The notes under the pieces were generated by a model. The model did no database searches, was not told where the DNA came from, and worked only from the letters and a program-made list of their open reading frames with translations. Below are positions 15,486 through 55,439 of a stretch of DNA of 64,000 nt, one piece after another. The DNA lies in contig JAKMXF010000111.1 of NCBI GenBank assembly GCA_024704765.1, forward strand, positions 1,194,619 through 1,258,618, written 5' to 3'. Position 1 is the first letter of the stretch; the number at the start of each line of letters is the position of its first letter. A program made the translations under genes and the position numbers. The DNA comes from Oopsacas minuta (taxonomy: Eukaryota; Animalia; Porifera).

Positions 15486-18400
15486 ATGTTAAATATACGT
15501 AATAGATTTCTAGAAAAGCTCTGCATAATAATGGAATCATCAGATATTATTTTCCTATTTCTAAAGAAGATGAGACTAGAGAAATATTATTCTAAATTTA
15601 CTTCTAATTCTTATTTCAATATAAAATCTATTGAAGATTGTAAATATGTACTTTCTAATTTAAACTATTTGGAAGAGATTGGCTTATCATCTGCTGAAGT
15701 TAATCGGTTCAAAAGGCTTTATGAAAAGGCTTTTAAGGTGAGTATTGAGTATGTATAAGTAATCCTTAATCTTATATTTAGTCCTTTGCAAGGTTGAAAC
15801 CGCTCGAACCAAGTATCAGTATTCATGAATAGCTTACTTAGCAATACTGAGATTAATCCTCTTAGATGTTCACAGGTTTACCCAGCCGAATACTATATTG
15901 TTCAGTTGAACTCAATATTGAATTTATCATTGTAATATTGGTTATTTGTTATTGTTACGTTTAACATTAGGAAAGTAAAGAAGAGTATGAGACCCAAATT
16001 TCAGAGAAGAAAGTTACTATTAAGTCACAACCCCTGTTAACTCAACCCTCCACTGAAGGTAGCATTAAAGGTGTTCAGATACAACAGAAGTTAGAAATTA
16101 TACAAAAAGATCCTATTTCTATTAGCTATAAATATCTAAATATTGATGGTATTAAATCAGCCAAAATTCGAAATGAATTAATTGATTCTTCTGAATGGAA
16201 GTCTTTAAGATATTTTGAGTTAGTAACAATATTTTACAAATTATTTCAAAACATTTTACTGTTCCTGAGTGTACAAGCATTGAAATTTATCACAGAACTG
16301 GATATCCAATGGTTACAAGTCCAAATGATTATTTTAAATTAGTTCAAGAATTTTGTGAAGAAGATTTTAAATTTGTTTTTATTTTACCTAAAAGGCTTTT
16401 CAAATATAATTTTAATCCATCAAGCCCGAATAAACGTAGATCAACTTATACCCATTACCAATCATATCTTATTCAAATATCCCATCAAGATTCTCGATCA
16501 AAATATGAAATCAGAATATTCTCCAGTGCAACTATTCTACGTGTTGATGAGTTAAAGTTTGAATGTTCTAAGAAATTCCACTTACCATACTCCTCCATTT
16601 CAATCAATCTTAGACTTCCTGACCAAGGTGGTATGGAATATAACTCAGAAGATAATACAAGTATCACCATTGACAACATATTGAATGGAGATTTCAAATT
16701 GTATGTAAGTGTTGGTGAGTATTTTTGGGAACCAAATTATTTTAACAGTTTCAAGTTTGATTATTATTTTCCTATTACTGAACTTACTCCTGACACACTA
16801 ATCTATACCAATATATATTTACTATTCCTTGCCAGAGAAGCTCATTTGAAGAGTTCATTAGATATATTTACCAGTTGTTTAGGTCTGCTACAGAAGATTT
16901 CTTGCTCCCCTCCTCTAGTTTATTCATTGAGGTTACTCTTTAATCAAAAACCTATTACACTCCCTCATAAGATTGCAATAATTGAAGGATTGATTACTAC
17001 TATAATGATGTTAGATAGAAGTATGAAACAATTTGATTTCTCTTGTCTATGGTGTTATCTGAAACAAAATACGAATTCATCATATTTTAAAAGTGAACAG
17101 TATGAAAAAGGTAGCACTAATGACATTTTACACAAAGAAATTAATCTTGATAACTATAGAGAGACTCCGCACATCAAGTATGATTATACTTCATTCAGAC
17201 GGGAATTTTTCAATTCTGAATCTACCTTTTTCATTTTTCAACACCCTATTGATATATATCGGAATTATCTGATGAGTCAGCACTGTAATGGGTTAACTAC
17301 GATACGATATCAGGAACTATTAATACCTTGTGTATTCTTTGGTTGTTCTATGAAGTCTGATAAACTAATGCTTGACTATTATTCCCCTTATCATGGGTTA
17401 ATACCATTTAATTCTTTTAAAGTTGACTCACCTTGCGAGCTTGAAATCAACGATTATTCTAAGATTTTAGTTATTTTAGATATTAGCAATGATATGAACA
17501 ATACATTAGATGGTTTTAATTACTTCCCGGATACTATCTCTAAAGACAATGTATTCTATCAACTGGATACAGCTCTCTTCTTGATTGAGATTATTATAGA
17601 TACATTAATTAGTAAGAATTTAGAATATTTATTGGGAATAACTTTAGTGTCCAATGACCATGGATTTGAAAATGGATATTTGGTATTTCAGGATTTGACA
17701 CCTGATTATGATTTTACTATTCAAGAATTACGAAAATGGATTCGAACTACTACCCCTGAAATACCCACAAAAGAACGTTCTTCACAAGGAGGTATATGTG
17801 GTGCTCTTATTATTATTTGGCGAAGAAATATAATAATACAGAACTATTTATCTTTACTAACCATAAACATATTGAACGTTTCTATGGAAGTAATGTCCAT
17901 CGTATCGAAACGGATATCTTGATGACGTCATATTGTGTAAACACTATTGTGTTTGGGGGATTAGGTGTGAGGCTGGAACCTTTATGTAAGAAATCACAAG
18001 GATCTTTAATTAGTGGAAATTCTTTCTTCAGTAAGTCTGCCAGAGATTCGAAAGACCCTATGTATTACTTCTGTCAATTCCGAGAATACGTTAATCTTAC
18101 CAGAGAGTTACTTACTGGTACGTCAAATCCTGATCAGCTGACTAGTTTTAAAGATGTTCAAATCCACTACAAGAATCATTTATCAAAAGCAGATGATTCT
18201 ATTAAAATATTACAAAACAAGCATTTATCCTCCAATCCACAATATCGACTAATGCCATCTATCCTACACACTATTTCTCAATATTTGAGTAATCCTAATC
18301 CTTTTGTATTTATCTACTCAGTAGATAACGATGTAACAAATTGGTTGTTAATCTTAAAGTTTCCCCCCAATTCTGTTCTATTCGGTTCTGATCATATTAT

Positions 18401-18986
18401 TTCTCTAACATTTTCCAAGCATTATTTATATCAACCTCCCATCTTTAAATTCCTTACTCCCATTCTACATCCTAATATCTATACAAATGGTAAAATATGT
18501 CATCCAATTCTACTAGAAGATTATGATCCTAACACAACTACTTTGAAGATAATTATTGATTCAATCCATTCTATGCTATGTAAACCAATTAGAACTCATG
18601 TTATCAATAGAGCTATTGGAGAACTATTTTTACTCGGCACTACTCTATATAAATTGCAGATTATATCAGTTATCGAAATAGTTTGTATGAATAGTCTTCC
18701 TCGCAGACAACAGGAAAAATCTCTGAATATTACATTGACTACCTCTGCTGTAACTCCACCAAAGTATTTACTCTGTCCTCTAACTAAAGAACTATATCAA
18801 AATCCTGTTATATCTCCTGATGGAAACACTTTTGAAAGAAGTGCTATCTTAGAAAGTTTGAAAATTTCCCAGACAGATCCCATCTCCAATAACCCGTTGA
18901 CTGAGGAATTCTTATTTCCAAACTATGCTATTGCTGATTGTGTTGTAAAATATAAAATGAACTGTGTTAAATATTCTCCAGTGTGA
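15486..18986 (+). CDS. Gene A1: SAM - Ubl-like x2 - helical region - degenerate VWA - E2/UBC - U-box; join(15486..15737,15971..18986) with two frameshifts
   Basis: SAM-like exon (FLKKMRLEKY...IGLSSAEVNRFKR) ends AAG|GTGAGT; acceptor at 15970. VWA strand ILVILDISNDM; E2 core TPILHPNIYTNGKICHPIL; U-box CPLTKELYQNPVISPDGNTFERSAI...DPISNNPL...PNYAI. Frameshifts at 16248-16251 and 17808/9 are corrected by comparison with copy A2. Confidence 0.8.
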
Positions 18987-19827
18987 GTATATATGTATAT
19001 ATGTATATTTGTATATTTGTATATTTGTATATCTTCTAATTTACCAATTTGTTAATGGCTTGCTATTTTGAATATTTATTGAGTTAATATTTTTTATAGA
19101 TTTTATCCTTTGAATTAACATTTATACGTTGTTATGTTTGACATATTTGTTCTTGCCTCAAAATGGTTCAGACCGGAACTCATCATGATTTCTTCATTTG
19201 ACATACTTGTGACTCCTGTGTCAAAGGGAATATTGTTACCCCGAACATTATTCACTAGTGAATGATGTTTAGGTAGCATCATTTCCTAGGAAACCCTGTT
19301 TCTCCGAGTGTTTCTCCTTGCACACTTAGGAACACGTAAGCGCCACCCTCGCAGGGCCAAGATCCAACGATGATCCAATGAAGTCCAATTCAATCACCAA
19401 AATAGTGAGTTAGAAACACACTTCGCAACACATGCGCGGGTCAAGGAAACGTGAGGTATTCCGTAATCATAATCAGACGTCCTCTGGTTATGCATAGGGA
19501 CCTACGGTTAATTGCTATTTATAATATAGATTATTTCACTATGAATTATACTTACTTAAAATCAACTATAACGTGCCAACCTGAGGGAAGAAGATTCTCC
19601 ATTATTTTTTCGGGTAGTTAAAGATTTCTCAATCGTCTTTCCTGACAAACAAACCCATAAACATAATCACTCAATAGTTATACACCAAAATTATACGTAC
19701 ATAAAGAGCTAATAGAGTTCAATCACACATCGTATCAACCTATATCTAAAGCACTACTGTTGTAAATATCAAATCTTAACTAAACTTGCATGCATATTCT
19801 AAATAAATAATAGAATCTTTGATCTGT

Positions 19828-22800
19828 TCATAGATCGGATAGCTTTGAGCGAAACTCTTCGATACCTTCTAGGACTGCATAGTTAGGAACAAGTTGTTCC
19901 TTTGTTAACGACTTGAATGAGAAAGGATCTTGATTAGCAACAGTTTCAAGGTACTCTTCAATTGCTTCTTTTTCATAAGTATAACCATGGCTAGTAATAA
20001 CTGGTTCTCTGAAAAGATTAAGAGTTAACGGGCAAGTAAACTGCCTATGATAACAATTTTTGATATCAGGATTACCCCCAAGTATCTCAATACGAACATC
20101 TATTTTAGTTTTGTTTCTTGCGTGTGTTTGTGTGAAATTTCTCGCCTCCCTCTCATACTCCTGTTTATTTGAGCTAAGCAAAGCAGCCTTGTAGCTATCC
20201 AGTGGATCATCTGGAGTAGCTTCAAGAAGTAATCCGTACACGTGATCTAATAACTCTCTAATCTTTTTCTCTGGAGAGTAGAAATTATCTAGGACCTTAT
20301 GACATATCCTCCCAGCACTGTTAATATTACAATGATATATAGGAGTGATGAATCTTATATTTGGAGCTTTGTTTGGATAATCTTTTGTAAATTCTATGTA
20401 TAAACAGAATATTCCATCTTCATATGGAGTTCCTTTTGGAGCTTCTAACATCAAGTGCCAGAAGTCAACAGCATCACTACATGGAAATATTTCAAAGTCT
20501 GGATGAGGATTTGTTTGTAGATAAGCTAGCTCTTTAATTATCCTCTTTGTAACTTCAGCACTAACTTGTGAAGATAGTATTTTATGCATTACCGCATTTG
20601 CTAAGCATTTTTGGGATGTTTGAAATGTGCTTGCCAGCTTGTCTGGGTGTCTGAATTCTGGATTAGTATCAAATGGAATTAATAGAGATTCTTCAATACT
20701 ACTATCCAAGTGATTCTTATATTTTCTACAAGCTAAATTTAACATTGTTTCAAATTCGAATATGTTTGATAGTTCCTTTTGGTCCTTTGGTTGAAATGAC
20801 AATCCACCTGATATTTTGGCTATAGCATGGGTATTAACTCTACCTCCACATAGCAACACGCTATCCATCACTATATTGTTGCTTATCAGAGAGTTTGATG
20901 CATTACTAGGTGATGTTTTGGATGCATTATCACCACCATCTCGTTAAACATAATATTCTTGCTTTTAGGGTATTAGGGAAACTGTGTTTCGATTTGAAGG
21001 AGTTAATATACTCAATGGTAAAGATAATAGCATCATAAATCGCGGTACTACCTTTGTTTGGGAATGATCTAATCTCTTTAGAAAAGTGTCTGAATGACTC
21101 AGTTAACTCTAATTCCAATTTAGATGTACCTCCAAATATCACTAATCCAATCATGTTTTTATAATTATAAGCTGTAGTACGATTACAGAACTGTTCAAAT
21201 CCAGTCATTGCTAGTTCATACTTGGATTTGCTTGCGAAATATTGTGAATCCATTGACCTACTTGTATCCAATACCACCATTATGATTTCTTCTATTTCAT
21301 TTAGTGGACGAGTTATAGTTGTGAAATCTACAGTTGTGTTTGTAGCTATAGTATCCGAGCCTTTTAGTAGTTTAGCATACTGAGGGTGATTCCCCTTTCT
21401 TAATGTTTCATCTAAATCATCAGCATCAAAATTGAAAGTATTTCCTCCTAGAGGATCAAATCCTTCATAAGATTTACTATCATCCTTACTACCTCCAATA
21501 TAGTTACAAACCATTCCATTTTCACCAAGAATCATACAAGGAACTGGACAAGTATGATCTTTAAGAGCTAAGGGCAATTGAATGCAGAGAAATTTCATTT
21601 CTAAACATTTTGTTATAATAGTGTTCCATTCTCTTGTTAAATCAACTTCATTGATTACCATAGCTTTTTCTTTCCATATCTGAGCCTCAAAGCCTGAGAA
21701 GCATTTGATTATCCTGACATATTCTGGAAGAGGTTCGAACATTTCGTTGTTAATTTTTCCAGTATAATTTGCTTTGTCAACTATGTGAGGAATTCCTTCA
21801 CTATCCATCACTCTTTTAGGATCTCTCATGCGATTATTCTTAATGGTACAGCAAAGATTGAAATCTGAATATTCCTCTGTTCTGCTGCTATGATATTCTT
21901 TTGCAAATTCAATGAAGTAAGCCCAAAAATTGATGGATTCTTCTAGGATTTGCTTCTCTTGAATGGTAATGGAGCTATTAACATCTCCTTTTAGCTGTTT
22001 CGGTCCTATTGACTTATATACCAACATCAGTACCTCTTGAATAGCAACTCTGTGTGGTAGAGTTAAACATTCTTTATTGAATAATAGTTTTAGTGCATGG
22101 ATTAATGGAGCACATCCTGTAATGCTTCTAATATGGCCAAGAACATTGGTTCGAATATTTAACGACTGTTTTCTAATCCATATGGAAAGTGTGTAGAGCG
22201 AAGCGAAAAACAAACTTTTTCCATAAACTGTTTGAGAATCATTCCATGAAGCTAAACATGCACTAGCAAAGAAATTCTGATCCCAGGATGATAACCAAAA
22301 TTCACTTTCTGGTATTATCTCTATCACAGATTGATCTTTAATATCATACTCTGTCAAAAGTTTTTCTTTATTTTCGAGTTTGATTTCCTTATCCTTAGAG
22401 ATAACTTCTAATTTGAAACATGTTGGTGGGAGAGATGTCATTTGATGAATGATATTCGTTAGTTCCTTCACTTTTACTTTCTTACAGTTAATACCAACAG
22501 GTATCGGTCCAAATCCTACCTCCTTAGCTCGAATATATATTACATCTTCTTTTTCATTTACCCTTTCGTTACCGACTTATTTATACTTGAAACTTTTTCA
22601 TCGGTTTCTGTGAATATTTTAGGTCTGGGTATCGCGTATAGTACAATTGTGTCATACGTCTCAAGACACCAATCACTCAACTTAGAAATATAACAAGATG
22701 GATTAATTGCTAGAGGATATCCTTCACGAGTATAGAGTTCTATTGTAAGCTTGTTTCCCAATTTTGTGTTCTTGTTCACAAATCATGTTAACCAAATCAA

Positions 22801-24294
22801 AATAATGCATCTTTTCGCTGTCAAATGTACACCCAAATGGTTTATTTCTGGTTTGAGCTCTGTCATTATTAGCTGATAGGATATTCGTAGATTACAACGG
22901 ATTCTCTGTTGAGATATTATCTTTTTCAATTTTTCTTGATCGACAGTTGTGGGACTAAATGGTAGATCAGAGGATTGTACTACAGGCTTCTGGTTCATCG
23001 AAGATTCCTGTTGAAAAAATACATCAATTATCGGATTACATATATATTACAAAGCGATTTTATCACACTGTGATGAAATCACAGAGAATTGCCAAAAATG
23101 AGGTGTGATGCAATTTTCTCGTCTTTTTTTATTTACTATTACTTCTATATGATTAATCATATTTCACACCTTTTTGCATGTTATTCACATCTTTATTTCC
23201 AGCTGGACACTGCAAAAAGTTCAACCCTTTTACACATCCTGTTAAGGAGGTTAGGACTTTGACAGAGCCCATGTACATTATATTGTGTTTAATATTTTTG
23301 CTTTGATGTGTACATTTTGTTGCAAATTGACAGTCCTTATGGGGCCGTAATATGATTAATCATATGACAGACCATGTAGATATAGATTTGAAATGTAAAA
23401 TTTATATCTACATACTCGATTACCCCCGACTAGCAGTTATAACGAAAACTCTAACATAATTTTGAATAATATGCAAAAGGGTGTAATATATGATTAATCA
23501 TTAGATAGATCTGGGAATTTATAGCTTTCAGACTCTGAAATATCTAAATATCGGACTCTACACACCCAATTACCCTTGCCAACATGTTGAAACCTAATCT
23601 CTAGCTTGCTTTTGAAATTGACATGGAAAGGTGTGAAATAATCACTTTAGAAATTCATAGCCGAGGTGCAAATCTCCGACCAAAAATGTATATGTATACG
23701 AATTTTCATGTAAATCTGATTGTTAGATTTCGCACGGCAGCGCAGACGGAAGGACGGACGTTACACATTGGCCATGCCATTGGGACATTTCCCTATAGAA
23801 GCTGCACTAAAATATGGATTCAGCATATCCAATATACTATTTAATTGAATTAAATTTACCGTACTTGATAAACGCGATTAATACTTAACATTTCAGAATT
23901 GCGAAATTCAAAATCTAAATTACACACCATATTTACTTACTTGACAACGCAGGGCGGCATACCCGGTACCCTATGGCTAGTCCGGCATCGCGGTACCACA
24001 TTCCAATAGGAATACAAAACAAGATAACTTCTTCAAGTGACTCAGAAAAGAAAATACTTATTGCTAATATAATATTTAGTGACTTACCTTTCTTATTTCT
24101 TCATTTACTTTTCGTTTAAACCGTCCAATTTCAACTGGTTTCATCCCCATTTTTACAAGCTCATCATCTGGAATATCTTGAAGGTCTTCCAGTTCTTCAG
24201 CTCCTAGATCGAGAATATGTTCTCTGTATTTGGCCAAACGGATCTGTTTTAAAAATGTATCCATCTCTGTCTCAGGGGTACAATTTGACGCCAT
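19828..24294 (-). CDS. Gene B1: SAM - Ubl x2 - helical region - VWA - E2/UBC - U-box; complement(join(19828..23007,24088..24294)) with four small indels
   Basis: SAM exon (FLKQIRLAKY...MGMKPVEIGRFKRK) ends AAG|GTAAGT. Ubl-like KLLTEYDIKDQSVIEI; VWA VVLDTSRSM...GSTAIYDAI...T-DGG; E2 GTPYEDGIF...YHCNINSAGRICHKVL; U-box CPLTLNLFREPVITSHGYTYEKEAIEEYL. Indels near 22829, 22762, 22560 and 20942 relative to B2. Confidence 0.82.
23560..23981 (+). mobile_element. Possible Helitron/Helentron-associated non-autonomous element in the B1 intron
   Basis: aattttcatgtaaatctg followed by a gacgg microsatellite, and a GC-rich end terminating in ctagt, as recalled for DINE/HINE-like elements. Boundaries are approximate. 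Confidence 0.35.
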
Positions 24295-24694
24295 GAGTTA
24301 TCACGGGAATTCAGGAAAATTGTGTATCTGCATTTCTGATTATCATTTACGTGTACTTATACTTTAGCTGATGTACATATACAAATAATTCTATAGTAAA
24401 GAAATTCTATCTTACCAGTTCTTATTGTCAATGGGAGGGATTAGGACGTATATTAAATGGTACTTTATGTGTTTATTACATATTATAATTTTTCCTAAAT
24501 CACATATGAATAGTGTTCTATTAGCATCGACGATATACGACGACTGTGCCGTCTGTCGAATACGTAGGATAGCGCTAGTTGCTAAGAACTTCAACTTGCA
24601 TGCTTGCAACATCTTTTACCTATTTATTTGATTAAAAATCAATAATAGCTTCTAATTGGTTAGACTAATAGCTATAAAGTAGAATAGTTAGCTG
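24295..24694. promoter_or_regulatory. Putative bidirectional promoter between B1 and SPCS3 (duplicated at 34681-35067)
   Basis: Head-to-head start codons 400 bp apart; sequence nearly identical in both units. Confidence 0.5.
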
Positions 24695-25854
24695 ATGAAC
24701 ACTGTATTGGCTCGATTGAATGCAATATTTGCATTCTCCCTAACTGTCCTTGCAGTTTGCGCTTTCCTCCTATTCATTACTTCAATACCTCTGAACAATT
24801 TTCTAAATGACGTCACTATTCTACCTAGTCAGGTGAAAGTACGTAATGTTAGAGAGTTCCCTCGGTCTCCTGTTACGTCAGACCTAGGCTATCTGGTGTT
24901 TGATCTGTCAGCTAACCTGTCAGGTCTCTTCCATTGGAATTGTAAAGAGGTGTTTCTCTATCTGACAGCTGAGTACCAAACTGAAGATAATACTTTGAAC
25001 CAGGTTAGTCATTTTCTTAGTTTTGTTGTTGATAGATATTTTCTATATGTTATTGTTTAGTATTTATATAGTTATCAGACGCAGGTAGTTATTATATTTT
25101 CATCATTGAATAGATAAATGCATAATCACATATAAACCATATACTTGTATCTAGTCATTAATTCTCCTCACATTATACTGGGGTATTGCATGACAGGCCG
25201 CAACTAGGGCCTTTTGGGTGGCCACGTGCCAGGGAATTATACAAGTTATTCGGAGCTCGCTCCTAACACTCCTCTCAAATTTCATACACCCAAATCAGTA
25301 AATTAGTGTTATGGCATAGGGAAAGATCTTCAATTTTCACGCTCCCAATGTAATACGCCTATAGCAGTGTACGGCGCTCCTTGATAATTCCTTGACACGT
25401 GGCCACCCAGTTTCGACTCCACCCTAATACAAAAAGTATAGGCGGGTGGCATATCGCCTTATTTCCCACCCAGATTCAAGAGCCTAGTTGCGCCAATATT
25501 GTATAATAATATAATTTTAGCAGCTAGCGGCAATTCCCTAGTTTCCTAGCTACCCCGATTAATATTTGGTTACAATTCAATGCTCGGGTGGCGATTAGGC
25601 TACTATTCGAGATAATACAGTATTCTATCTAGATTATACTCTGGGATTCAATAATCCTCAGACATGGAAACTTACTTCTTGATTATCGTAATATGAATAC
25701 CAAGTATCCTTTCTTTGATGATGGACACGGTCTGAAGGGTAGAAATATTTCTCTAATTCTATCTTGGAATACTATACCTAATGCTGGTATGTTACCTATG
25801 TACTCTACTGATAGGGACCAAGTACGATTCTCATTTCCTAGATTGTATGAGTAG
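24695..25854 (+). CDS. SPCS3: Signal peptidase complex subunit 3, copy 1; join(24695..25003,25633..25854)
   Basis: MNTVLARLNAIFAFSLTVLA, LFHWNCKEVFLYLTAEY, NQ|IILWD, KYPFFDDGHGLKG, LSWNTIPNAG; 176 aa, intact. Confidence 0.95.
25196..25494. mobile_element. MITE-like element in the SPCS3 intron (also at 35570-35875)
   Basis: Imperfect TIR ggccgcaactagg / cctagttgcgcc plus a nested inverted repeat 25216-25238 vs 25386-25408 (21/23). No TSD seen. Confidence 0.5.
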
Positions 25855-26140
25855 CTTATTAAATAGTTATGTGTTTGGTGTAGTTATTATTCATAATCCC
25901 TTATGTTTAGTTATTTGCCAGGTTGAACCGCTCGAACCAACTATCAGTATTCATGAGTAGGTTCGCTTCCTTGTCCAATACGTACTGATATGAATGTTAA
26001 CCCAACCGAATGCCAATACTATGTATCCTAAATATTGAGTACAACTGAATAACATCAAAATGTATCGTGATACTGATATTATTCAGTTGGTTTATTTAAT
26101 TGCAATTTGGCTTTTCATATATTCTTACAATCAACATTAG

Positions 26141-28773
26141 CACAGTAAAGAAGAATATGAGGCCCGAATTACAGATGAGAAAGGTAGTATTAAAGGTGTT
26201 CAGATAGAACAGAAGATAGAAATTACAAAAAGATCCTATTTCTATTTCTATTAGCTATAAATATCTAAATATTGATAGTATTAAATCAGCCAAAATTCGA
26301 AATGAATTAATTGATTCCTCTGAATGGATGTCTTTAAGATATTTTGAGTTAGTAACAATATTTTACAATTTATTTCAAAAACATTTTACTGTTCTTGAGT
26401 GTACAAGCATTGAAATTTATCACAGAACTGGATATCCAATGGTTACAAGTCCAAATGATTATTTTAAATTAGTCCAAGAATTTTGTGAAGAAGATTTTAA
26501 ATTTGTTTTTATTTTACCAAAAAGGCTTTTCAAATATAATTTTAATCCATCAAGCTCGAATAAACGTAGATCAACTTATACCCATTACCAATCACATCTT
26601 ATTCAAATATCCCATCAAGATTCTCGATCAAAATATGAAATCAGAATATTCCTCAATACTACTATTCTACGTGTTGATGAGTTAAAGTTTGAATGTTCTA
26701 AGAAATTCCACTTACCATACTCCTCTATTTCAATCAATCTTGGACTTCCTGACCAAGGTGGTATGGAATATAACTTAGAAGATAATACAAGTATCCACAT
26801 TGACAACATATTGAATGGAGATTTCAAATTGTATGTAAGTGTTGGTGAGTATTTTTGGGAACCAAATTATTTTAACAGTTTCAAGTTTGATTATTATTTC
26901 CTATTACTGAACTTACTGCTGACACACTAATCTATACCAATATATATTTGCTATTCCTTGCCAGAGAAGCTCATTTGAAGAGTTCATTAGATACAGTTAC
27001 TAGTTGTTTAGGTCTGCTACGGAAGATTTCTTGTTCCCCTCCTCTTGTTTATTCATTGAGGTTACTCTTTAATCAAAAACCCATTACACTCCCTCATAAG
27101 ATTGCAATTATTGAAGGATTGATTACTACTATAATGATGTTGAAATCTCATAGTAAATATATGAAACAATTCGAATTATCCTGTTTATGGCTCTATTTGT
27201 GTAGAAAGAGTGATGCATTTAATTTTGAAAGTGAACAAAAGGAAATTAATTCAAAAACGAACCCTAAAAATCAAATATTCAAGGAAACTGATCTTGATAA
27301 GTATAGAGAGTCTCCTCATATCAAATACGATTATACTTCATTCAGACGAAACAGGTATTCTCAATCCAGCTTAAATCCAACCATTTTTCATCACCCTATT
27401 GATTTATACCGGGAGTATCTAATGACTAGGCATTGCAATGGGTTAACTAAAATACGATATAAGAATGGCATAGAAACACCATTTGTATTCTATGGTTTTT
27501 CTATCAAGTCTAATACACCGACTCTTAATTGTTTTTCTCCTCTCCTTGGAGAGATTTCATTTGATCCTTATGTAGTCGGTAGTTGTGAAATATTGAATGT
27601 TAGTAATTATTCTAAGATATTAATTATCCTAGATATCAGTTATGATATGAACAATACATTAGATGGTCTTAATTCCATCCCGGATACTATCTCTAAAGAC
27701 AATGTATTCTATCAACTGGATACAGCTCTCTTCTTGATTGAGATTATTATAGATACATTAATTAGTAAGAATTTAGAATATTTATTGGGAATAACTTTAG
27801 TGTCCAATGACCATGGATTTGAAAATGGATATTTGGTATTTCAGGATTTGACTATTAAGTATAATCATTCTATTCAAGAATTACGAAAATGGATTCGAGC
27901 TACTACCCCTGAAATACCCACAAAAGAACGCTCTTCGCAAGGAGGTATATGTGGTGCTCTTGATTATTATTTGGCGAAGAAATATAATAATACAGAACTA
28001 TTTATCTTTACTAACCATAAATATATTGAACGTTTCTATGGAAGTAGTGTCCATCGTATCGAAACGGATATCTTGATGACGTCATATCGGTAAACACTAT
28101 TATGTTTGGGACATTAGGTGTGAGGCTTGAAACTTTATGTAAGAAATCACAAGGATCTTTAATTAATAGAGATTCTTTCTTCAGTAAGTCTGCCAGAGAT
28201 TCGAAAGACCCTATGTATTACTTCTGTCAATTCCGAGAATATGTTAATCGTACCAGAAAGTTACTTATTGGTACGACAAATCCTGATCAACTGTCTAGTT
28301 TTAAAGATATTTACAGTCAGTACAGGAATCGTTTGTCAAAGCAGAAGATTCCATTAAACGTAAGCATGATTCCTCCAATCAACACTACCAAGTAATTTCA
28401 TCTATCCTACACACTATTTCTCAATATTTGAGTAATCCTAATCCTTTTGTATCTATCTACTCAGTAGATGACGATGTAACAAATTGGTTGTTGTCCTCTA
28501 ACTAAAGAACTATATCACAATCCTGTTATATCTCCTGATGGAAACATTTTTGAAAGAAGTGCTATCTTAAAAAGTTTGAAAATTTCCCAGACAGATTTCA
28601 TCTCCAATAACCCGTTGACTGAGGAATTCTTATTTCCAAACTATGCTATTGCTGATTGTGTTGTAAAATATAAAATGAACTGTGTAAAATTCTGCAATGT
28701 GAGTATATATGTATATCTGTATATGAGTATATCTGTGTATGAGTATATCTCCTCTAATTTAGTAATTTGTTAA
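26141..28773 (+). pseudogene. Gene A2: copy of A1 lacking the SAM exon and the E2 core
   Basis: Aligns to A1 from its acceptor onward. Indels near 26225, 26899, 28089 and 28338; a 425-bp deletion at 28491/2 equivalent to A1 18349-18773; U-box retained. Confidence 0.8.
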
Positions 28774-29584
28774 TGGCTTGCTATTTTGAATATTTATTGA
28801 GTTATATATGTTTTATAGATTTTATCCTCTGAATTAACATTTGTACGTTTGTTATGTTTTGATATATTCGTTCCTGCCTCAAAATGGTTGGGATCGGAAC
28901 TCATTCGTGATGATTTCTTCATTTGACATACTTGTGACTCCGGTGTCAAAGGGAATAATGTTACCCCGAACATTATTCCCTAGTGAATGATGTTTAGGTA
29001 GCATCATTTCCTAGGAAACCCTGTTTCTCCGAGTGTTTCCCCTTGTACACTTAGGAACACGTAAGCGGGTCAAGGAAACTTCCAGCCACCCTCGCAGGGC
29101 CAAGATCCAACGATAATCCAATGAAAATCCAGTTCAATCAACAAAATAGTGAGTTAGAAACACACTTCGCAACACATGTGCGGGTCAAGGAAACGTGAGG
29201 TATTCTGTACAGTATTCCGTAATCATAACCAGACGTCCTCTGGTTATGCATTGGGACGTACGGTTAATTGCTATTTAATAATATAGATTATTTCACTATG
29301 AATTATACTTACTTAAAATCAACTATATCGTGCCAACCTGAGGGAAGAAGATTTCCTATTATTTTTTCGGCTAGTTGAAGATTTCTCAATCGTCTTTCCT
29401 GACAAACAACCCATAAACCTAATCACTCAATAGTTATACACCAAAATTATACAAACATAAAGAGCTAATAGAGTTCAATCACACATCCTATCAACCTAGT
29501 ATCTAAAGCACTGCTGTTGTAAATATCAAATCTTAACTAAATTTGCATGCATATTCTAAATAAATAATAGAATCTTTGATCTGT

Positions 29585-32500
29585 TCATAGATCGGATAGC
29601 TTTGAGCGAAACTCTTTGATGCCTTCTATGACTGCATAGTTAGGAAAAAGTTGTTCCTTTGTTAACGACTTGAATGAGAAAGGATCTTGATTAGCAACAG
29701 TTTTAAGGTACTCTTCAATTGCTTCTTTTTCATAAGTGTGACCATAGATAGTAATAACTGGTTCTCTGAAAAGACCGAGAGTTAACGGGCAAGTGAACTG
29801 CCCATGATAACAATTTTTGATATCAGGATTACCCCCTAGTATCTCAATACGAACATCTCGTTTAGTTTTGTGCCTTGCGTGTGTTTGTGTGAAATTTCTT
29901 GCCTCCTTCTCATACTCCTGTTTATTTGAGCTAAGCAAAGCAGCCTTGTAGCTATCTAGTGGATCATCTGGAGTAGCTTCAAGAAGTAATCCGTACACGT
30001 AATTCAATATCTCTCTAATTTTCATCTCTGGTGAGTAAAACCTATCTAGGACCTTATGACATATCCTCCCAGCACTGTTAATATTACAATGATATATAGG
30101 AGTGATGAACCTGATATTTGGAGGTTTATTTGGATAATCTTTTGTAAATTCTATGTATAAACAGAATATTCCTTTTCATATGGAGTTCCTTCTGGTGCTT
30201 CTAACATCAAGTGCCAGAAGTCAACAGCATCACTACATGGAAATATTTCAAAGTCTGGGTGAGGATTTGTTTGTAGATAAGCTAGCTCTTTAATTATCTC
30301 CTTGTAACTTCAGCACTAACTTGTGAAGATATTATTTTATGCATTACCGCATTTACTAAGCATTTTAGGGATGTTTGAAACGAGCTTGCCAGCTTGTCTG
30401 GGTGTCTGAATTCTGGATTAGTATCAAATGGATTAATAGAGATTCTTCAATACTAATATCCAAGTGATTCTTATATTTCCTACAAGCTAAATTTAACATT
30501 GTTTCAAATTCAAATATGTTTGATAGTTCCTTTTGGTCCTTTGGTTGAAATGACAATCCACCTGATATTTTGGCTATAGCATGGGTATTAACTTTACCTC
30601 CACATAGTAACACGCTATCCATCACTATATTGTTGCTTATCAGAGAGTTTGATGCATTACTAGGTGATATTTTAGATGCATTATCACCACCAGATGTTAA
30701 ACATAATATTCTTGCTTTTAGAGTATTAGGGAAACTGTGTTTCAATTTGAAGGAGTTAATATGCCCAATGGTAAAGATAATAGCATCATAAATCGCGGTA
30801 CTACCTTTGTTTGGGAATGATCTAATCTCTTTAGAAAAGTGTCTGAATGACTCAGTTAACTCTAATTCCAATTTAGATGTACCTCCAAATATCACTAATC
30901 CAATCATGTTTTTATAATTATAAGCTGTAGTACGATTACAGAACTGTTCGAATCCAGTCATTGCTAATTCATACTTGGATTTGTTTGCGAAATATTGTGA
31001 ATCCATTGACCTACTTGTATCCAATACCACCATTATGATTTCTTCTATTTCATTTAGTGGACGAGTTATAGTTGTGAGATCTACAGTTGTGTTTGTAGCT
31101 ATAGTATCCGAGCCTTTTAGTAGTTTATCATACTGAGAGTAATTCCCCTTTCTTAATGTTTCACCTAAATCATCAGCATCAAAATTGAAAATATTTCCTC
31201 CTAGAGGATCAAATCCTTCATAAGATTTACTATCATCCTTACTACCTCCAATATAGTTACAAACCATTCCATTTACACCAAGAATCATACAAGGAACTGG
31301 ACAAGTATGATCTTTAAGAGCTAAGGGTGATTGAATGCAGAGAAATTTCATTTCTGACCGTTTTGTTATAATAGTGTTCCATTCTCTTGTTAAATCAACT
31401 TCATTGATTACCATAGATTTTTCTTTCCATATCTGAACCTCAAAGCCTGAGAAGCATTTGATTATCCTGACATATTCTGGAAGAGGTTCGAACATTTCGT
31501 TATTAATTTTTCCAGTATAATTTGCTTTGTCAACTATGTGAGGAATTCCTTCACTATCCATCACTCTTTTAGGATCTCTCATGCGATTATTCTTAACACT
31601 ACAGCAAAGATCGAAATTTGAATATTCCTCTGTTCTGCTGCTATGATATTCTTTTGCAAATTCAATGAAGTAAGCCCAAAAATTGGTGGATTCTTCTAGG
31701 ATTTTATTCTCTTGAATGGTAATGGAGCTATTAACATCTCCTTTTAGCTGTTTCGGTCCTATTGACTTATATACCAACATCAGTACCTCTTGAATGGCAA
31801 CTCTGTGTGGTAGAGTTAAACATTCTTTATTGAATAATAGTTTTAGTGCATGGATTAATGGAGCACATCCTGTAATGCTTCTAATATGGCCAAGAACATT
31901 GGTTCGAATATTTAACGGTTGTTTTCTAATCCATATAGAAAGTGTGTAGAGCGAAGCGAAAAACAAACTTTTTCCATAAACCGTTTGAGAATCATTCCAT
32001 GAAGCTAAACATGCACCAGCAAAGAAATTCTGATCCCAGGATGATAACCAAAATTCACTTTCTGGTGTTATCTCTATCACAGATTGATCTTTAATATCAT
32101 ACTCTGTCAAAAGTTTTTCTCTATTTTCGAGTTTGACTTCCTTATCCTTAGAGATAACTTTTAATTTGAAACATGTCAGTGGGAGAGATGTCATTTGATG
32201 AATGATATTCGTTAGTTCCTTCACTTTTACTTTATTACAGTTAATACCAACCTGTATCGGTCCAAATCCTACCTCCTCATTTTGAAAGAATATCATATCT
32301 TCTTTTTCATTTATCCCTTTCGTTACCGACTTATTTATACTTGAAACTTTTTTATCCTCTTCCGTGAATATTTTAGGCCTGGGTATCGCGTATAGCAAAA
32401 TTGGGTCATACGTCTCAAGACACCAATCACTCAACTTAGAAATATAGCTAGATGGATTAATTGCTAGAGGATATCCTTCACGAGTATAGAGTTCTATTGT

Positions 32501-34680
32501 AAGGTTGTTTCCCAAATTCCTGTGTTCTTGTTCACAAATCATGTTAACCAAATCAAAATAATAGTTCTTTTCGCTGTCAAATGTAACACTCAAATGGTTT
32601 ATTTGTGGTTTGAGCTCTGTCATTATTAGCTGATAGGATATTCTTAAGTTACAACGGATTCTCTGTTGAGATATTATCTTTTTCAATTTTCCTTGATCGA
32701 CAGTTGTGGGACTAAATGGTACGCCAGTGGTTTGTAGCTTAAGAGGAGGGCTCATCGGAGACGCCTGTCGGAAATTTATTTAATTATTACAGCTTCCAAA
32801 ATATTTGTTGATTAGGCCATGTAATGTATATTCTTGTTTCTCATCCCCTCCCGTCCGAGAAGATTTTATTTAGCATTTTTCCAAATTTATGGATAATTCT
32901 TTGGTCACCGATTGTGCAATCCATATTTTACTAGTACTTGTATAGTTGAATAAATTAATAATTTTAATGCTGAGAGGGAACGTGATGAGCAGGATATATT
33001 CCTAAGTATAAAAGTAAGGAAAGGCTTCAAAGTATTGCCCCCTCCACAAACTTGCTCCTCTTATGTAGTATAACCGGCGCCTGTTTTAATGTCCTAGTTT
33101 CCCACAACTTGTCTACATCTACATCCTTTGAGATACAATATATTTTCATTACTTGTGGAAGCTTCCGAGTACAAAAACGTTGATACTATCATAATTAGAA
33201 CTTTTAAGTTGAAAATTTGAAGGAATATAAGAATTCCAACATGATAACGATATTTACACAAAATAGGAGAATACAAAAGTATATTACTTGTTCATAACAT
33301 ATTGAATTATAATTTCTAAACTGAAAAATCTATCTTAATAATCCAAATATTTCCATAAAGAAGCGACTTCGCATTCCCCTGGAATTTAAACTAAGGGAAC
33401 GACATCCTCCCCAATATACCCCTGTTGATGAGATGGTCAAAATATTTACATATTAACTGGACTATAAAAATACAAGTAAATACAGTCCGCGTCCCATTTC
33501 TGAAGAAATTCCCGATGAGAAACAAGTAACTTATTTTCCATAACCTAAATCAGCGTACTCTATTACCCAGCATAACAGTTGAAACCAATGAGAAACTTGG
33601 AAATTCGAAATTCGGAAAAATGAGACCTTAAATGGAGGCCATTCGTTAACTCGAACAGATTTTCAATTCCCTTGAGGTTCGAGTTACCGAGTTTGGAGTT
33701 GTTGACTGTACTATCGTCATATACAATTAACATACATTCCATAGGTACTAACCGGAAACTGGGGTGAATAATAATCAGGGTGACCATTTCCTCATTCGTA
33801 AAAAAGGACATTTAATGATAAAGAATTTTCATTTATAGTTATTACGATGATTAGCTATGCTTGCTTATAGCGCTATTTTTCCACATTAATTGCGGCCATT
33901 TTAAGGAAATCCAGTGGGATGTTCTAGAAATACGATTTATTGAGTGCTAGTCTGGTTTGAAGCCTCAATAAAGGAAATTATTAAAAGCAAAAATACAGGA
34001 TTATATTTAGGGGTCTCCTGCCCAAATCGATGTTTTGAGAAGTTGCACGTTTGGAGCCTACTCCTTTCCCCAATCAGAATCGTTGACAACTTTTCTAATG
34101 TGGGGAGAGCTATTTCTTAGTGGCCATAAAGGTTTATATTAATAGTATAGTAGAAAAACTGAGCCCCCTTGTCTACGGTCTTGCCATTATTTGACCTAGT
34201 ATGGTGTGTGTACATACTACTCTTGAGTTTAAAGAAGTTTGTATGAAAATTAAGTACAGTCAACATCCACTAACTTTAATGCTCATTAACTCGAACGATG
34301 TTCACTCCCATTCGTTGTACTTTTACTACTTATCGTATCCGTTAACTCGAACATTCGCTATTTTGAACAGATTATGATTTCCCTTGAGGGTAAGAGTTAT
34401 TTACTGTATGTCACAAAAGCACAAAATCTCTCAATTAATATACTTATTGCTAATATAATATTTAGTGACTTACCTTTCTTATTTCTTCATTTACTTTTCG
34501 TTTAAACCGTCCAATTTCAGCTGGTTTCATCCCCATTTTTACAAGCTCATCATCTGGAATATCTTGAAGGTCTTCCAGTTCTTCAGCTCCTAGATCGAGA
34601 ATATGTTCTCTGTATTTGGCCAAACGGATCTGTTTTAAAAATGTATCCATCTCTGTCTCAGGGGTACAATTTGACGCCAT
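29585..34680 (-). CDS. Gene B2: SAM - Ubl x2 - helical region - VWA - E2/UBC - U-box; complement(join(29585..32764,34474..34680)) with three 1-nt deletions
   Basis: Paralog of B1; open for 796 aa, then -1 indels near 30431, 30299 and 30173. E2 YHCNINSAGRICHKVL and the U-box are intact when the frame is restored. Confidence 0.82.
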
Positions 34681-35067
34681 GAGTTATCACGGGAATTCAG
34701 GAAAATTGTGTATCTGCATTTCTGATTATCATTTACGTGTACTTATACTTTAGCTGATGTACATATACAAATAATTCTATAGTAAAGAAATTCTATCTTA
34801 CCAGTTCTTATTGTCAATGGGAGGGATTAGGACGTATATTAAATGGTACTTTATGTGTTTATTACATATTATAATTTTTCCTAAATCACATATGAATAGT
34901 GTTCTATTAGCATCGACGATATACGACAACTGTGCCGTCTGTCGAATACGTAGGATAGCGCTAGTTGCTAAGAACTTCAACTTGCATGCTTGCAACATCT
35001 TTTACCTATTTATTTGATTAAAAATCAATAATAGCTTATAATAGCTATAAAGTAGAATAGTTAGCTG

Positions 35068-36235
35068 ATGAACACTGTATTGGCTCGATTGAATGCAATA
35101 TTTGCATTCTCCCTAACTGTCCTTGCAGTTTGCGCTTTCCTCCTATTCATTACTTCAATACCTCTGAACAATTTTCTAAATGACGTCACTATTCTACCTA
35201 GTCAGGTGAAAGTACGTAATGTTAGAGAGTTCCCTCGGTCTCCTGTTACGTCAGACCTAGGCTATCTGGTGTTTGATCTGTCAGCTAACCTGTCAGGTCT
35301 CTTCCATTGGAATTGTAAAGAGGTGTTTCTCTATCTGACAGCTGAGTACCAAACTGAAGATAATACTTTGAACCAGGTTAGTCATTTTCTTAGTTTTGTT
35401 GTTGATAGATATTTTCTATATGTTATTGTTTAGTATTTATATAGTTATCAGACGCAGGTAGTTATTATATTTTCATCATTGAATAGATAAAATGCATAAT
35501 CACATATAAACCATGTACTTGTATCTATTCATTAATTCTCCTCACATGATACTGGGGTATTGCATGACAGGCCGCAACTAAGGCATTTTAGGTGGCCACG
35601 CGCCAGGGAATTATACAATTTATTCGGAGCTCGCACCTAGCACTCCTCTCAAATTTCATACACCTAAATCAGTAAGTTAGTGTTATGGTAAACGTAAAGG
35701 GAAAGATCTTCAATTTTCATGCTCCCAATATAATACGCCTATTGCAGTGTACGGCGCTCCTTGATAAATCCTTGACACGTGGCCACCCAGTTTCGACTCC
35801 ATCCTAATACAAAAAGTATAGGCGGGTGGGCATGTCGCCATATTTCCCACCCAGATTCAAGAGCCTAGTTGTGCCAATATTGTATAATAATATAATTTTA
35901 GCAGCTAGCGGCAATTCCCTAGTTTCCTAGCTACCCCGATTAATATTTGGTTACAATTCAATGCTCGAGTGGCGATTAGGCTACTATTCGAGATAATACA
36001 GTATTCTATCTAGATTATACTCTGGGATTCAATAATCCTCAGACATGGAAACTTACTTCTTGATTATCGTAATATGAATACCAAGTATCCTTTCTTTGAT
36101 GATGGACACGGTCTGAGGGGTAGAAATATTTCTCTAATTTTATCTTGGAATACTATACCTAATGCTGGTATGTTACCTATGTACTCTACTGATAGAGACC
36201 AAGTACGATTCTCATTTCCTAGATTGTATGAGTAG
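35068..36235 (+). CDS. SPCS3: Signal peptidase complex subunit 3, copy 2; join(35068..35376,36014..36235)
   Basis: Nearly identical to copy 1 (one K>R change seen, GLKG vs GLRG); intact splice sites and stop. Confidence 0.95.
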
Positions 36236-53933: not shown

Positions 53934-54503
53934 CAGAAATTTAGCTAAAATATACATAAATATTATATTATAAATCGTATTACCTCGAATAATCGCAATC
54001 TCCTGAGACTCCTAACAGTTTTAACTGCCTAAAGTGAATCGTTGTTTCCCATTATTTGGCTTACTGTTTATAAGGATAAATACACATAATGCAAGCACAT
54101 AGGTATAGTTATATCGAAATGATCGTGTTTACAAAAATCGAAACTGTCCTCTCAAGGGGTCTTGAAATAATTAATCGCCCTGGCTATTATTTGAGGTAAT
54201 ACCGTAATTTACTACTTATCGAATTATCGCTAATATCTTCTCTGATAAACTACGTTTGCTGAATCAGATTTATTCTAATTTCGACACAGCTGACAAAATA
54301 AAACGCTCATGATGAATAATAAGATACTAATTAGTGCTAATTCTATATCTCAATTGCAAGACTTAGCCTACCACACCACTAATGAACTAAAACTACTATA
54401 TAAACTGGAGTAGTATAAGAAAGTGCATTTGAGTTAGTTTAGAAACTTGTTAAAGACTTGAGTAGCTGCAAGAATAAATAATTATACGTAAATATAATCA
54501 AGC

Positions 54504-55145: not shown

Positions 55146-55439
55146 CTATACCATCTTGGAAAAAAAGATATACTGTAAAACTACATGTTTATGTTTGGGA
55201 TTTTGCTATATTACCACTATATGTATTGCTGGTATTTGTATGCAGATATCTTTTAATGAGTTATATATCTCTGGTAAATATTCTAATAATAACCACTTGG
55301 GTGCTTCATGACGTGAGGCTCTTATGACTTACCCTGCGAGCCATTGATTTCTAACTCGAACCATTTAAACGTGTCGATTGTAATTGTATAATAATGAATT
55401 GATTAGAAGGTAATAGATTTTGCAAACTAATCTCTATTA

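What the first reader, a model, noticed from the sequence alone, without database searches (positions are those of the whole stretch)
15486..34680. Self-contained ubiquitylation machines: SAM-Ubl-Ubl-VWA-E2-U-box proteins hidden by introns and frameshifts
Seen in sequence: the ORF track breaks this region into more than a dozen pieces, but splicing the phase-0 SAM exons and correcting indels against the sister copy yields proteins of roughly 1,100-1,150 aa. Each has SAM, two ubiquitin-like segments (e.g. KLLTEYDIKDQSVIEI, compare ubiquitin TLSDYNIQKESTLHL), VWA, an E2 with its catalytic Cys (HPNIYTNGKIC in A, YHCNINSAGRIC in B) and a C-terminal U-box. Established: U-boxes normally activate a separate E2~Ub in trans, and the E2/E3 hybrids I know in animals (UBE2O, BIRC6) have no U-box. 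Inference: an intramolecular E2-E3 chain builder with SAM oligomerisation and VWA ligand sensing, possibly acting in innate defence or proteostasis. I do not recognise this architecture from characterised proteins, but cannot confirm it is undescribed.
Basis: partly seen in the sequence, partly recalled or inferred. Interest (0 to 1): 0.9.

Follow-up and report, generated by a model that had tools for sequence, protein, structure and literature searches.

The report
Broken copies of single-chain E2–U-box ligases
The region holds four tandemly duplicated, apparently frameshifted copies of a real gene family, found from protists to fish but not studied in any paper I could find, whose single protein chain combines a ubiquitin-conjugating enzyme (E2) with its own U-box ligase domain.

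Summary
Window 15486-34680 is in Oopsacas minuta (glass sponge), contig JAKMXF010000111.1. It contains a ~10-kb tandem duplication with two convergent gene pairs: A1/B1 and A2/B2.

Pfam and AlphaFold/Foldseek confirm SAM, two tandem ubiquitin-like domains, VWA, a UBE2D/E-like UBC domain with His, Asn and Cys invariant in the 28-sequence glass-sponge alignment, and a C-terminal U-box.

The architecture is not rare. A profile search gives 875 cluster representatives at E<=1e-30. They include an intact single-exon paralog in O. minuta itself, other glass sponges (with full-length Vazella transcripts), many ray-finned fishes, a lamprey, a ciliate, Cyanophora and Chromera. All carry only automatic or "uncharacterized" names, and I found no paper describing it.

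In this assembly all four local copies are interrupted by 1-2 bp frameshifts. A2 also lacks the SAM exon and the E2 core. Yet there are no nonsense substitutions among about 394 differences, so assembly indel errors remain possible. My single read-mapping call was lost to a filter.

The self-contained E2-E3 mechanism is plausible but untested. The scan noted the same family at two other loci of this genome.

The parts
16056..25899 (.). Tandem duplication, unit 1. It holds the A1 main exon, B1 and an SPC22/SPCS3 gene.
   Evidence: Self-BLAST: 88% identity over gene A, 94.5% over gene B, 97% over the B SAM exon plus SPCS3.
26181..36281 (.). Tandem duplication, unit 2. It holds the A2 remnant, B2 and the second SPC22/SPCS3 gene.
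   Evidence: NCBI gene calls are shown.
15486..15737 (+). A1 exon 1: SAM domain, with donor AAG|GTGAGT in phase 0. This is the only A-type SAM exon in the window.
   Evidence: Pfam SAM_TNK, 25.2 bits. Donor site. tblastn finds no second copy. A 77%-identical exon exists in a relative, L001.
16037..18986 (+). A1 main exon; its start is approximate. It encodes Ubl-Ubl, a helical region, a MIDAS-less VWA-like domain, UBC (about 18291-18650, HPN...C) and U-box (about 18759-18953). It is interrupted by 1-bp deletions near 16247 and at 17808.
   Evidence: Intact orthologs P0044-P0049 are 878-926 aa.
19828..23007 (-). B1 main exon. It encodes Ubl-Ubl, a helical region, a degenerate U-box-like stretch, VWA (from about 21283), UBC (about 20544-20134, HCN...CH) and U-box (about 20040-19846). 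Frameshifts lie at 22830, 22762, 22561 and 20942.
24088..24294 (-). B1 exon 1: SAM domain, with donor AAG|GTAAGT in phase 0.
26307..28773 (+). A2, a truncated and decayed copy of A. It has no SAM exon, four frameshifts, and a 425-bp deletion that removes the E2 core.
   Evidence: It is annotated as the 510-aa LOD99_412.
29585..32764 (-). B2 main exon. A 796-aa ORF (32755-30365) covers Ubl-Ubl through VWA (about 31036-30512). Three 1-bp deletions at 30433, 30299 and 30173 put the N-terminal half of the UBC fold out of frame. The catalytic loop and U-box (30025-29585) are back in frame. The MIDAS element LTDGGD reads LTSGGD.
34474..34680 (-). B2 exon 1: SAM domain, 98.6% identical to that of B1.

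Best explanation
The region is a ~10-kb tandem duplication in the glass sponge Oopsacas minuta. It carries two convergent pairs (A1 -> <- B1, A2 -> <- B2) of lineage-specific, fast-evolving paralogs.

They belong to an ancient eukaryotic family with no studied member that I could find. Its single chain reads: SAM, Ubl, Ubl, helical domain, a divergent U-box-like domain, VWA (MIDAS), a UBE2D/E-like UBC domain, and a C-terminal U-box.

Likely mechanism of intact members (inferred, not shown):
- The built-in E2 is charged by E1 in trans on its conserved Cys.
- The C-terminal U-box sits about 25 helical residues after the UBC fold. It clamps the E2~Ub of its own chain, or of a neighbour in a SAM-driven oligomer, into the closed reactive state.
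- The VWA metal site binds an acidic ligand or substrate.
- The rigid Ubl-Ubl-helical-U-box-like body provides docking or regulation.

At this locus the copies are decaying. A2 is dead: it has no SAM exon and its E2 core is deleted. A1, B1 and B2 each carry 2-4 frameshifts in the deposited assembly. Intact function in this species probably rests on paralogs elsewhere, for example KAI6660015.1.
For: - Domains: Pfam hits on window pieces and on intact homologs.
- Structure: the AF2 model of Vazella P0002 has pLDDT 83. Its E2 matches UBE2D/E structures at 40-44% identity and rmsd about 1 A.
- N-terminal half: the model has pLDDT 89 and pTM 0.89. Its tandem beta-grasp matches linear di-ubiquitin, ISG15 and OASL. 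Ubl2 matches ubiquitin at Z=13, rmsd 1.2 A.
- Internal U-box-like domain: zf-Nse hits in 6 of 10 slices and U-box hits in 3 of 10 slices from diverse members, with E down to 4e-5 for zf-Nse and 5e-4 for U-box.
- Catalytic residues: H946, N948 and C956 are invariant in 28 glass-sponge sequences. Helix 1 KR and PxxDPL are kept in B-type and in most other members.
- MIDAS (DxSxS, T, D) is complete in B/C types.
- Breadth: 875 representatives at E<=1e-30. Named members come from O. minuta, Blepharisma, Cyanophora, Chromera, a lamprey and many ray-finned fishes. Structural relatives of the N-terminal body exist in AFDB clusters.
- N-terminal module swaps: SAM is replaced by Par3-NTD in Cyanophora and by RING in some fishes. 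This fits a requirement for self-association or an extra E3 module.
- Duplication and breaks.
- Relatives keep an intact convergent A/B pair with the same neighbours (L002) and intact tandem B copies (L001).
- dN/dS between the two local copies is 0.36-1.1.
- In the tree, A and B/C types are glass-sponge expansions.
Against:
- There are no nonsense substitutions among 148 (B pair) and 246 (A pair) differences, where about 7.5 and about 13.5 are expected under neutral decay. This sits badly with 14 real frameshifts and favours either very recent decay or assembly indel errors.
- The position equivalent to UbcH5 Phe62, and the SPA loop that usually contacts RING/U-box domains, are not conserved in the family. 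Canonical cis-activation is therefore not assured.
- The relative placement of E2 and U-box in the model could not be inspected, because no coordinates or PAE were returned.
- The profile-profile comparison of the sponge internal domain with the C-terminal U-box was not significant.
Confidence: 0.65

Rival explanations
1. The frameshifts are consensus errors of the hybrid PacBio/Illumina assembly inside a tandem repeat. Under this reading A1, B1 and B2 are intact, expressed genes of about 1,080-1,130 aa. Only A2 is truly truncated.
For: - None of the four copies has a nonsense substitution in the homology-defined frame. About 21 in total would be expected if the divergence were neutral.
- 12 of the 14 frame-breaking indels are 1 bp long.
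- Indels in the hypervariable part of A are all multiples of 3.
- dN/dS is below 1 for the VWA and E2-U-box parts of B, at 0.36-0.37.
- Orthologous pairs in two relatives are intact.
- Canu-corrected PacBio CLR reads were co-assembled (PMC10280926).
Against: - The assembly was built with SPAdes --careful on Illumina k-mers and polished with Pilon.
- The copies differ by 6-11%, so 150-bp reads should map uniquely.
- Neighbouring genes (the SPC22 copies, actin) are intact.
- Several indels sit in clusters with adjacent substitutions, which looks like real mutation.
- B2 also has a MIDAS D->S change, and A2 has undeniable structural losses.
Confidence: 0.35
2. The ORF pieces are separate small genes, for example a free-standing 346-aa E2-U-box protein from B1, rather than parts of one long protein.
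For: The NCBI annotation calls B1 as three genes and B2 as two. The 346-aa piece contains complete UBC and U-box domains.
Against: The pieces are collinear, without gaps, with single intact ORFs of 1,000-1,150 aa in relatives and with Vazella full-length transcripts. The piece boundaries coincide with 1-2 bp indels relative to the sister copy.
Confidence: 0.05
3. The UBC domain is a non-catalytic, UEV-like scaffold. Under this reading the protein is an ordinary U-box E3 that recruits a free E2.
For: - The family replaces HPN by HCN.
- It changes the usual E3-contact residues.
- A-type copies lack helix-1 KR and PxxDPL.
- There is a weak UEV Pfam hit.
Against: - The catalytic Cys, and the His and Asn of the H-x-N motif, are invariant in the 28 glass-sponge sequences.
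- In the 39 wider members, Cys and Asn are kept in every row printed, and His in all but one row, whose segment did not align.
- UQ_con scores reach 1e-46.
- The fold matches active UBE2D/E at rmsd about 1 A.
- UEVs characteristically lack the Cys (established knowledge).
Confidence: 0.1

Closest known systems
Uncharacterised database proteins of the same family: O. minuta KAI6660015.1 (LOD99_14356), Blepharisma stoltei CAG9312007.1, Lampetra planeri CAN0424417.1, and many fish 'uncharacterized protein LOC...' / 'UBC core domain-containing protein' entries such as Esox lucius A0A3P8Z502
   Same: They align over the full length, profile positions about 10-987. They share the domain order: (SAM)-Ubl-...-VWA-UQ_con-U-box. 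They share the active-site signature YHCN[IV]N..GR[IV]CH.
   Different: The window's A and B types belong to fast-evolving glass-sponge-specific clades. They have an intron after the SAM exon, whereas LOD99_14356 is a single exon. Their internal U-box-like domain is degenerate (B) or deleted (A). They are interrupted in this assembly.
E2/E3 hybrid enzymes UBE2O and BIRC6
   Same: A UBC domain is embedded in a large multidomain chain that carries its own substrate-handling parts. The concept is E3-independent ubiquitylation (PMC12818219 abstract).
   Different: There is no homology outside the UBC fold. Here a bona fide U-box follows the E2.
Mb_UBOXa, the VWA + U-box protein of Monosiga, Naegleria, Trimastix and Spironucleus (Marin 2010, PMC3087547)
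   Same: VWA and U-box occur in one chain, and the gene is described as ancient and widespread among protists. It is possibly the same family.
   Different: The paper reports no UBC domain and states that the gene is absent from animals. I did not retrieve those sequences, so identity with this family is untested.
Plant RGLG1/2 (copine-like VWA + RING E3) and WDSUB1 (WD40-SAM-U-box)
   Same: An intracellular VWA, or a SAM, is combined with a RING-clan E3 domain (RGLG papers listed; WDSUB1 in PMC3087547).
   Different: Neither contains an E2 domain. RGLG uses a free E2 (from my own knowledge).
Engineered E2-RING fusion constructs (e.g. PDB 8v0d, UbcH5B-RING3 of MIB1)
   Same: This is the top Foldseek hit of the full model, with an E2 followed by a RING-type domain in one chain.
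   Different: It is artificial. The rmsd of 14 A over both domains shows a different relative placement in the model.
ISG15 / OASL tandem ubiquitin-like domains
   Same: Two consecutive beta-grasp domains; these are the best PDB matches of the N-terminal part.
   Different: The Ubls here are internal. They have no C-terminal Gly-Gly, so they are not conjugatable modifiers (read from the P0002 sequence).

Membership tests
UBC/E2 superfamily (catalytically competent) | UBC fold | tested here: met
   Pfam UQ_con: A1 6e-19, B1 8e-34. The homolog model matches UBE2D/E structures at TM 0.9-0.96.
UBC/E2 superfamily (catalytically competent) | Active-site Cys plus the H-P-N motif | tested here: inconclusive
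   Cys, His and Asn are invariant in the 28 glass-sponge sequences. A types have HPN. B types and most of the family have HCN, with Pro replaced by Cys. In B2 the N-terminal half of the fold is out of frame.
UBC/E2 superfamily (catalytically competent) | E1-dependent thioester formation | not testable with these tools
   This needs biochemistry.
U-box E3 ligases | U-box domain with conserved core (CP[IL]..., DP, PN) | tested here: met
   Pfam U-box at 1e-14 to 4e-16 on A1, B1 and B2. Invariant C, P, L, P, V, G, T, E, I, D, P, L and N columns.
U-box E3 ligases | Stimulates Ub discharge from an E2 | not testable with these tools
   This needs biochemistry.
VWA domain with MIDAS | DxSxS + Thr + Asp metal site | tested here: inconclusive
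   B1 is complete but split by the frameshift at 20942. B2 has Asp replaced by Ser. The whole A clade has the site degenerate (DISND, no Thr, FTNH) and falls below the Pfam VWA threshold.
SAM domain | Five-helix SAM bundle / Pfam SAM models | tested here: met
   A1 SAM_TNK scores 25.2 bits (cutoff 25). B1 SAM_1 scores 22.8 bits (cutoff 23), which is borderline. The paralog P0058 hits three SAM models. There are five helices at residues 9-69 of the P0002 model. Polymerisation was not tested.
Ubiquitin-like beta-grasp (two copies) | beta-grasp fold | tested here: met
   Ubl2 matches ubiquitin at Z 13, rmsd 1.2 A, and Pfam ubiquitin is above cutoff in P0008, P0057 and P0058. Ubl1 is covered by the first unit of linear Ub chains but has no sequence-level hit.
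SAM-Ubl-Ubl-(U-box-like)-VWA-UBC-U-box family (unnamed) | Collinear full-length homology to intact members | tested here: met
   tblastn of P0002 and P0033 onto the window. Homolog searches. Tree.
Functional protein-coding gene | Uninterrupted reading frame after splicing | tested here: not met
   All four copies carry frameshifts in the deposited assembly. Whether the reads agree could not be tested.
UBE2O/BIRC6-type E2/E3 hybrids | Homology beyond the UBC domain (UBE2O CR1-CR2 regions; BIRC6 BIR and giant scaffold) | tested here: not met
   No such Pfam families were found on any member. The resemblance is functional only.

The most novel reading that the evidence does not exclude
The family would be a previously unstudied, pan-eukaryotic class of autonomous ubiquitin ligases, present in ray-finned fishes, a lamprey and glass sponges among animals.

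In this reading a built-in E2 has a special active site: HCN...CH, with a second Cys next to the oxyanion Asn. It is driven by one or two in-chain U-boxes. It is switched on by oligomerisation through SAM, Par3-NTD or RING modules, and by ligand binding at the VWA metal site. That would make it a self-contained sensor-effector, possibly of innate defence.

The tandem, fast-evolving A/B pairs of glass sponges would then be its arms-race edition.
Probability: 0.3. Interest if true: 0.8.

Novelty: new variant of a known kind. Interest (0 to 1): 0.6.

Why it matters
Ubiquitylation is usually described as a relay between separate E2 and E3 proteins. UBE2O and BIRC6, described as the only two E2s that ubiquitinate substrates without an E3 (PMC12818219 abstract), have no RING or U-box.

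A conserved natural fusion of a UBE2D/E-like E2 with a U-box would be a new model for how E3 domains activate E2~Ub in cis or within polymers. Its extra parts (oligomerisation, ubiquitin-like and metal-dependent binding domains) add to that interest.

The family occurs in fish, so it is testable in zebrafish or salmonid cells. It is expanded and fast-evolving in glass sponges, which hints at a role in conflict or defence.

For this window specifically, the value is mostly as a pointer to the family. The local copies are probably decaying or mis-assembled.

Tried and rejected
- **Read mapping.** The runs found are of unknown kind and hold about 0.6 of the sampled words.
- **Independent assemblies.** Exact-protein look-ups for B1 pieces returned only the deposited O. 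minuta assembly.
- **Internal domain versus C-terminal U-box.** The profile-profile comparison using sponge-only alignments was not significant: probability about 1%, 18 columns. Support for a U-box-like fold comes only from sub-threshold but consistent Pfam hits in diverse members and one suggestive VIA row (7bbd_B).
- **Ubl1 profile against PDB sequences.** Nothing meaningful was found.
- **ESM Atlas, N-terminal half.** Scores were at most 0.71, so these are leads only (UBR4 C-terminal, USP9X/24 Ubl).
- **Literature.** Seven attempts, of which five ran on this family, gave no paper on a natural E2-U-box or VWA-E2-U-box protein. Two were rejected for term syntax.
- **Alternative genetic code.** Rejected as the cause of the ORF breaks, because the breaks coincide with 1-2 bp indels relative to the sister copy.
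- **E2/U-box docking.** The geometry could not be read, because the structure tool returns no coordinates or PAE.

Full report
**What is at the locus**

The window is eukaryotic, with about 34% GC. An annotated protein from the same 1,926,057-bp contig identifies it as Oopsacas minuta (Hexactinellida), GCA_024704765.1, JAKMXF010000111.1.

Self-comparison shows a tandem duplication: unit 1 at 16056-25899 and unit 2 at 26181-36281. Identity is 88% over gene A, 94.5% over gene B and 97% over the B SAM exon plus an SPC22/SPCS3 gene.

Each unit holds a plus-strand gene (A) converging on a minus-strand gene (B). This gives A1 (15486-18986), B1 (24294-19828), A2 (26307-28773) and B2 (34680-29585).

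**Domains**

Pfam on the ORF pieces gives SAM, VWA_2/VWA, UQ_con and U-box. Homolog searches return uninterrupted proteins of about 1,000-1,150 aa with the same domain set. They include complete transcripts of the glass sponge Vazella pourtalesii: P0002 at 1,112 aa, P0004 at 1,150 aa, and P0033 at 1,149 aa.

An AlphaFold2 model of P0002 has pLDDT 83. It shows a five-helix SAM domain. Its UBC domain superposes on UBE2D and UBE2E structures at rmsd about 1 A and 40-44% identity.

A separate model of residues 95-625 has pLDDT 89 and pTM 0.89. It is one compact body whose first about 200 residues match linear di-ubiquitin, ISG15 and the OASL tandem Ubl.

**An extra domain**

Between the helical region and the VWA lies a stretch (P0002 about 436-500) with a U-box-like pattern. 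In diverse family members it hits RING-clan Pfam models: zf-Nse in 6 of 10 slices and U-box in 3 of 10. The two strongest U-box hits score 19.8-20.7 bits against a cutoff of 21.4.

It is degenerate in the sponge B/C types and deleted in the A type. A sponge-only profile comparison with the C-terminal U-box was not significant. I call it probable, not shown.

A related class of 1,750-2,230-aa proteins, such as Chromera velia A0A0G4HFP5, has the order U-box-(Ub)-VWA-UBC.

**Gene structure and breaks**

The SAM exons end at canonical phase-0 donors, and the main exons begin at CAG|G acceptors. The spliced product is collinear with the Vazella transcripts.

Relative to intact homologs and to the sister copy:
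- B1 has 1-2 bp indels at 22830, 22762, 22561 and 20942.
- B2 has three 1-bp deletions at 30433, 30299 and 30173. They put the first half of the UBC fold out of frame.
- A1 has 1-bp deletions near 16247 and at 17808.
- A2 has four small frameshifts and a 425-bp deletion of the E2 core. The duplication breakpoint lies in A's intron, so A2 has no SAM exon.

The NCBI annotation accordingly splits B1 into three genes and B2 into two. It bridges A1 into a 990-aa model.

**Real decay or assembly error?**

Two relatives keep these genes intact:
- L002 has actin, eIF1A, abhydrolase, then an A-type gene (914 aa) converging on a B-type gene (1,003 aa). The convergent A/B pair and the neighbouring actin match the window.
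- L001 has two intact tandem B copies next to SPCS3 and an A-type SAM exon.

Between the local copies dN/dS is 0.36-0.74 for B and 0.5-1.1 for A.

Strikingly, none of the four copies has a nonsense substitution in the correct frame. There are 0 among 148 B differences and 0 among 246 A differences, where about 7.5 and about 13.5 are expected if the changes were neutral. Frameshifts without nonsense codons suggest either very recent inactivation or consensus indel errors.

The assembly is a SPAdes --careful hybrid of Illumina and Canu-corrected PacBio reads, polished with Pilon (PMC10280926). This argues for base-level accuracy, and several indels are embedded in substitution clusters.

No independent assembly carries these ORFs.

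I put about 60-65% on real frameshifts, meaning decaying copies, and about 35% on artefacts. A2 is dead either way.

**The family is large and old**

A profile of 28 glass-sponge sequences was searched against 1.84 billion cluster representatives. It finds 875 at E<=1e-30. Many 1,000-1,160-aa proteins match over essentially the whole profile.

Named examples:
- An intact, single-exon O. minuta paralog, KAI6660015.1, with SAM + ubiquitin + VWA + UQ_con + U-box.
- The ciliate Blepharisma stoltei, the glaucophyte Cyanophora paradoxa (N-terminal Par3-NTD instead of SAM), Lampetra planeri, and Chromera velia.
- At least 120 clusters from ray-finned fishes, from Amia to salmonids, cyprinids, cod and percomorphs. 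Most are named "uncharacterized protein LOC..." or "UBC core domain-containing protein". Some carry an N-terminal TRIM-like RING.

The N-terminal body also finds AlphaFold DB clusters at E 3e-27 to 1e-7. Several of these are named "UBC core domain-containing protein" or "VWFA domain-containing protein".

In a maximum-likelihood tree the window's B type groups with C types as a glass-sponge expansion. The A type is a separate long-branched clade. LOD99_14356 sits with the conserved vertebrate and protist set.

The scan's own notes list two more loci of this family in the same genome.

**Motif states**

The family hallmark is YHCN[IV]N..GR[IV]CH. The Pro of the canonical HPN is a Cys, and a His follows the catalytic Cys. 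This holds in fishes, the lamprey, ciliate-type members and sponges.

The glass-sponge A clade has HPN. It has lost the helix-1 Lys-Arg, the PxxDPL motif and the whole VWA metal site. B/C types keep all of these, except that B2 has Asp->Ser in the third MIDAS element.

The UbcH5 Phe62-equivalent and the SPA loop, the usual RING/U-box contacts, vary across the family.

**Mechanism (inference)**

These features argue for an active E2 charged by E1:
- The catalytic triad-like residues are invariant.
- The fold is UBE2D/E-like.
- The E1-binding helix is retained.

The U-box sits about 25 helical residues downstream. This is compatible with cis or neighbour-in-polymer activation.

SAM, Par3-NTD or RING at the N-terminus suggests self-association. 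The intact MIDAS suggests metal-dependent binding of an acidic ligand. None of this was tested.

**Known relatives and literature**

I found no paper on a natural E2-U-box fusion.

Marin 2010 (PMC3087547) described a VWA + U-box gene, Mb_UBOXa, in Monosiga, Naegleria, Trimastix and Spironucleus. He called it ancient and absent from animals. It may be this family with the E2 unnoticed; I did not test that.

UBE2O and BIRC6 are functional analogues only.

**Verdict**

- The architecture is a widespread family with no study that I could find, rather than a locus-specific invention.
- The local copies are broken in the assembly.

Noticed in passing
P0002 residues 946-957; window B1 about 20290-20250 (minus strand): The family-wide active-site signature is H-C-N ... 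C-H instead of H-P-N ... C. A second Cys sits next to the oxyanion Asn, and a His follows the catalytic Cys. This holds from fish and lamprey to ciliate-type members. Only the glass-sponge A clade (and P0077) has HPN. A redox, relay or metal role is conceivable but untested.
   Followed up: partly
P0002 residues about 436-500; window B1 about 21900-21700, B2 about 31650-31450 (minus strand): There is a probable internal divergent U-box-like (RING-clan) domain between the helical region and the VWA. It is clearer in fish, protist and LOD99_14356 members, degenerate in sponge B/C types, and deleted in A types.
   Followed up: partly
window 24695-25899 and 35068-36281: A signal-peptidase-complex subunit gene (SPC22/SPCS3, annotated 176 aa) is duplicated along with the ligase genes. 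The two copies are 97% identical at the DNA level, and their first exons encode identical protein.
   Followed up: partly
window 17015-17313 versus 27144-27463: All indels between A1 and A2 in this stretch, just before the VWA-like domain, are multiples of three (9, 9, 3, 3). This is a hypervariable but frame-preserving segment and matches the scan note s1-293688.
   Followed up: partly
window 54435-55158 and 57158-57878: A further 0.72-kb direct repeat at 97.5% identity lies outside the finding. It was not examined.
   Followed up: no
L006 8001-11462 (O. minuta JAKMXF010000044.1): This is an intact single-exon paralog, LOD99_14356 (1,153 aa). It has the strongest Pfam SAM hits among the members I scanned, a Pfam ubiquitin hit above cutoff, and one of the clearest internal U-box-like hits. 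UniRef auto-names it 'non-specific protein-tyrosine kinase', apparently because of the SAM_TNK hit.
   Followed up: partly
P0242, P0283, P0295, P0298, P0318 (fish); P0126, P0094: The N-terminal module is swapped in some members. Some fish paralogs have a TRIM-like C3HC4 RING there, and Cyanophora and an unnamed protist have a Par3/HAL N-terminal oligomerisation domain in place of SAM.
   Followed up: no
L001 887-1108 and 2269-3201: In a related glass sponge the A-type SAM exon lies just beyond SPCS3, next to tandem B copies. The gene order around the cluster therefore differs between species, which suggests rearrangement of the A/B/SPCS3 block.
   Followed up: partly
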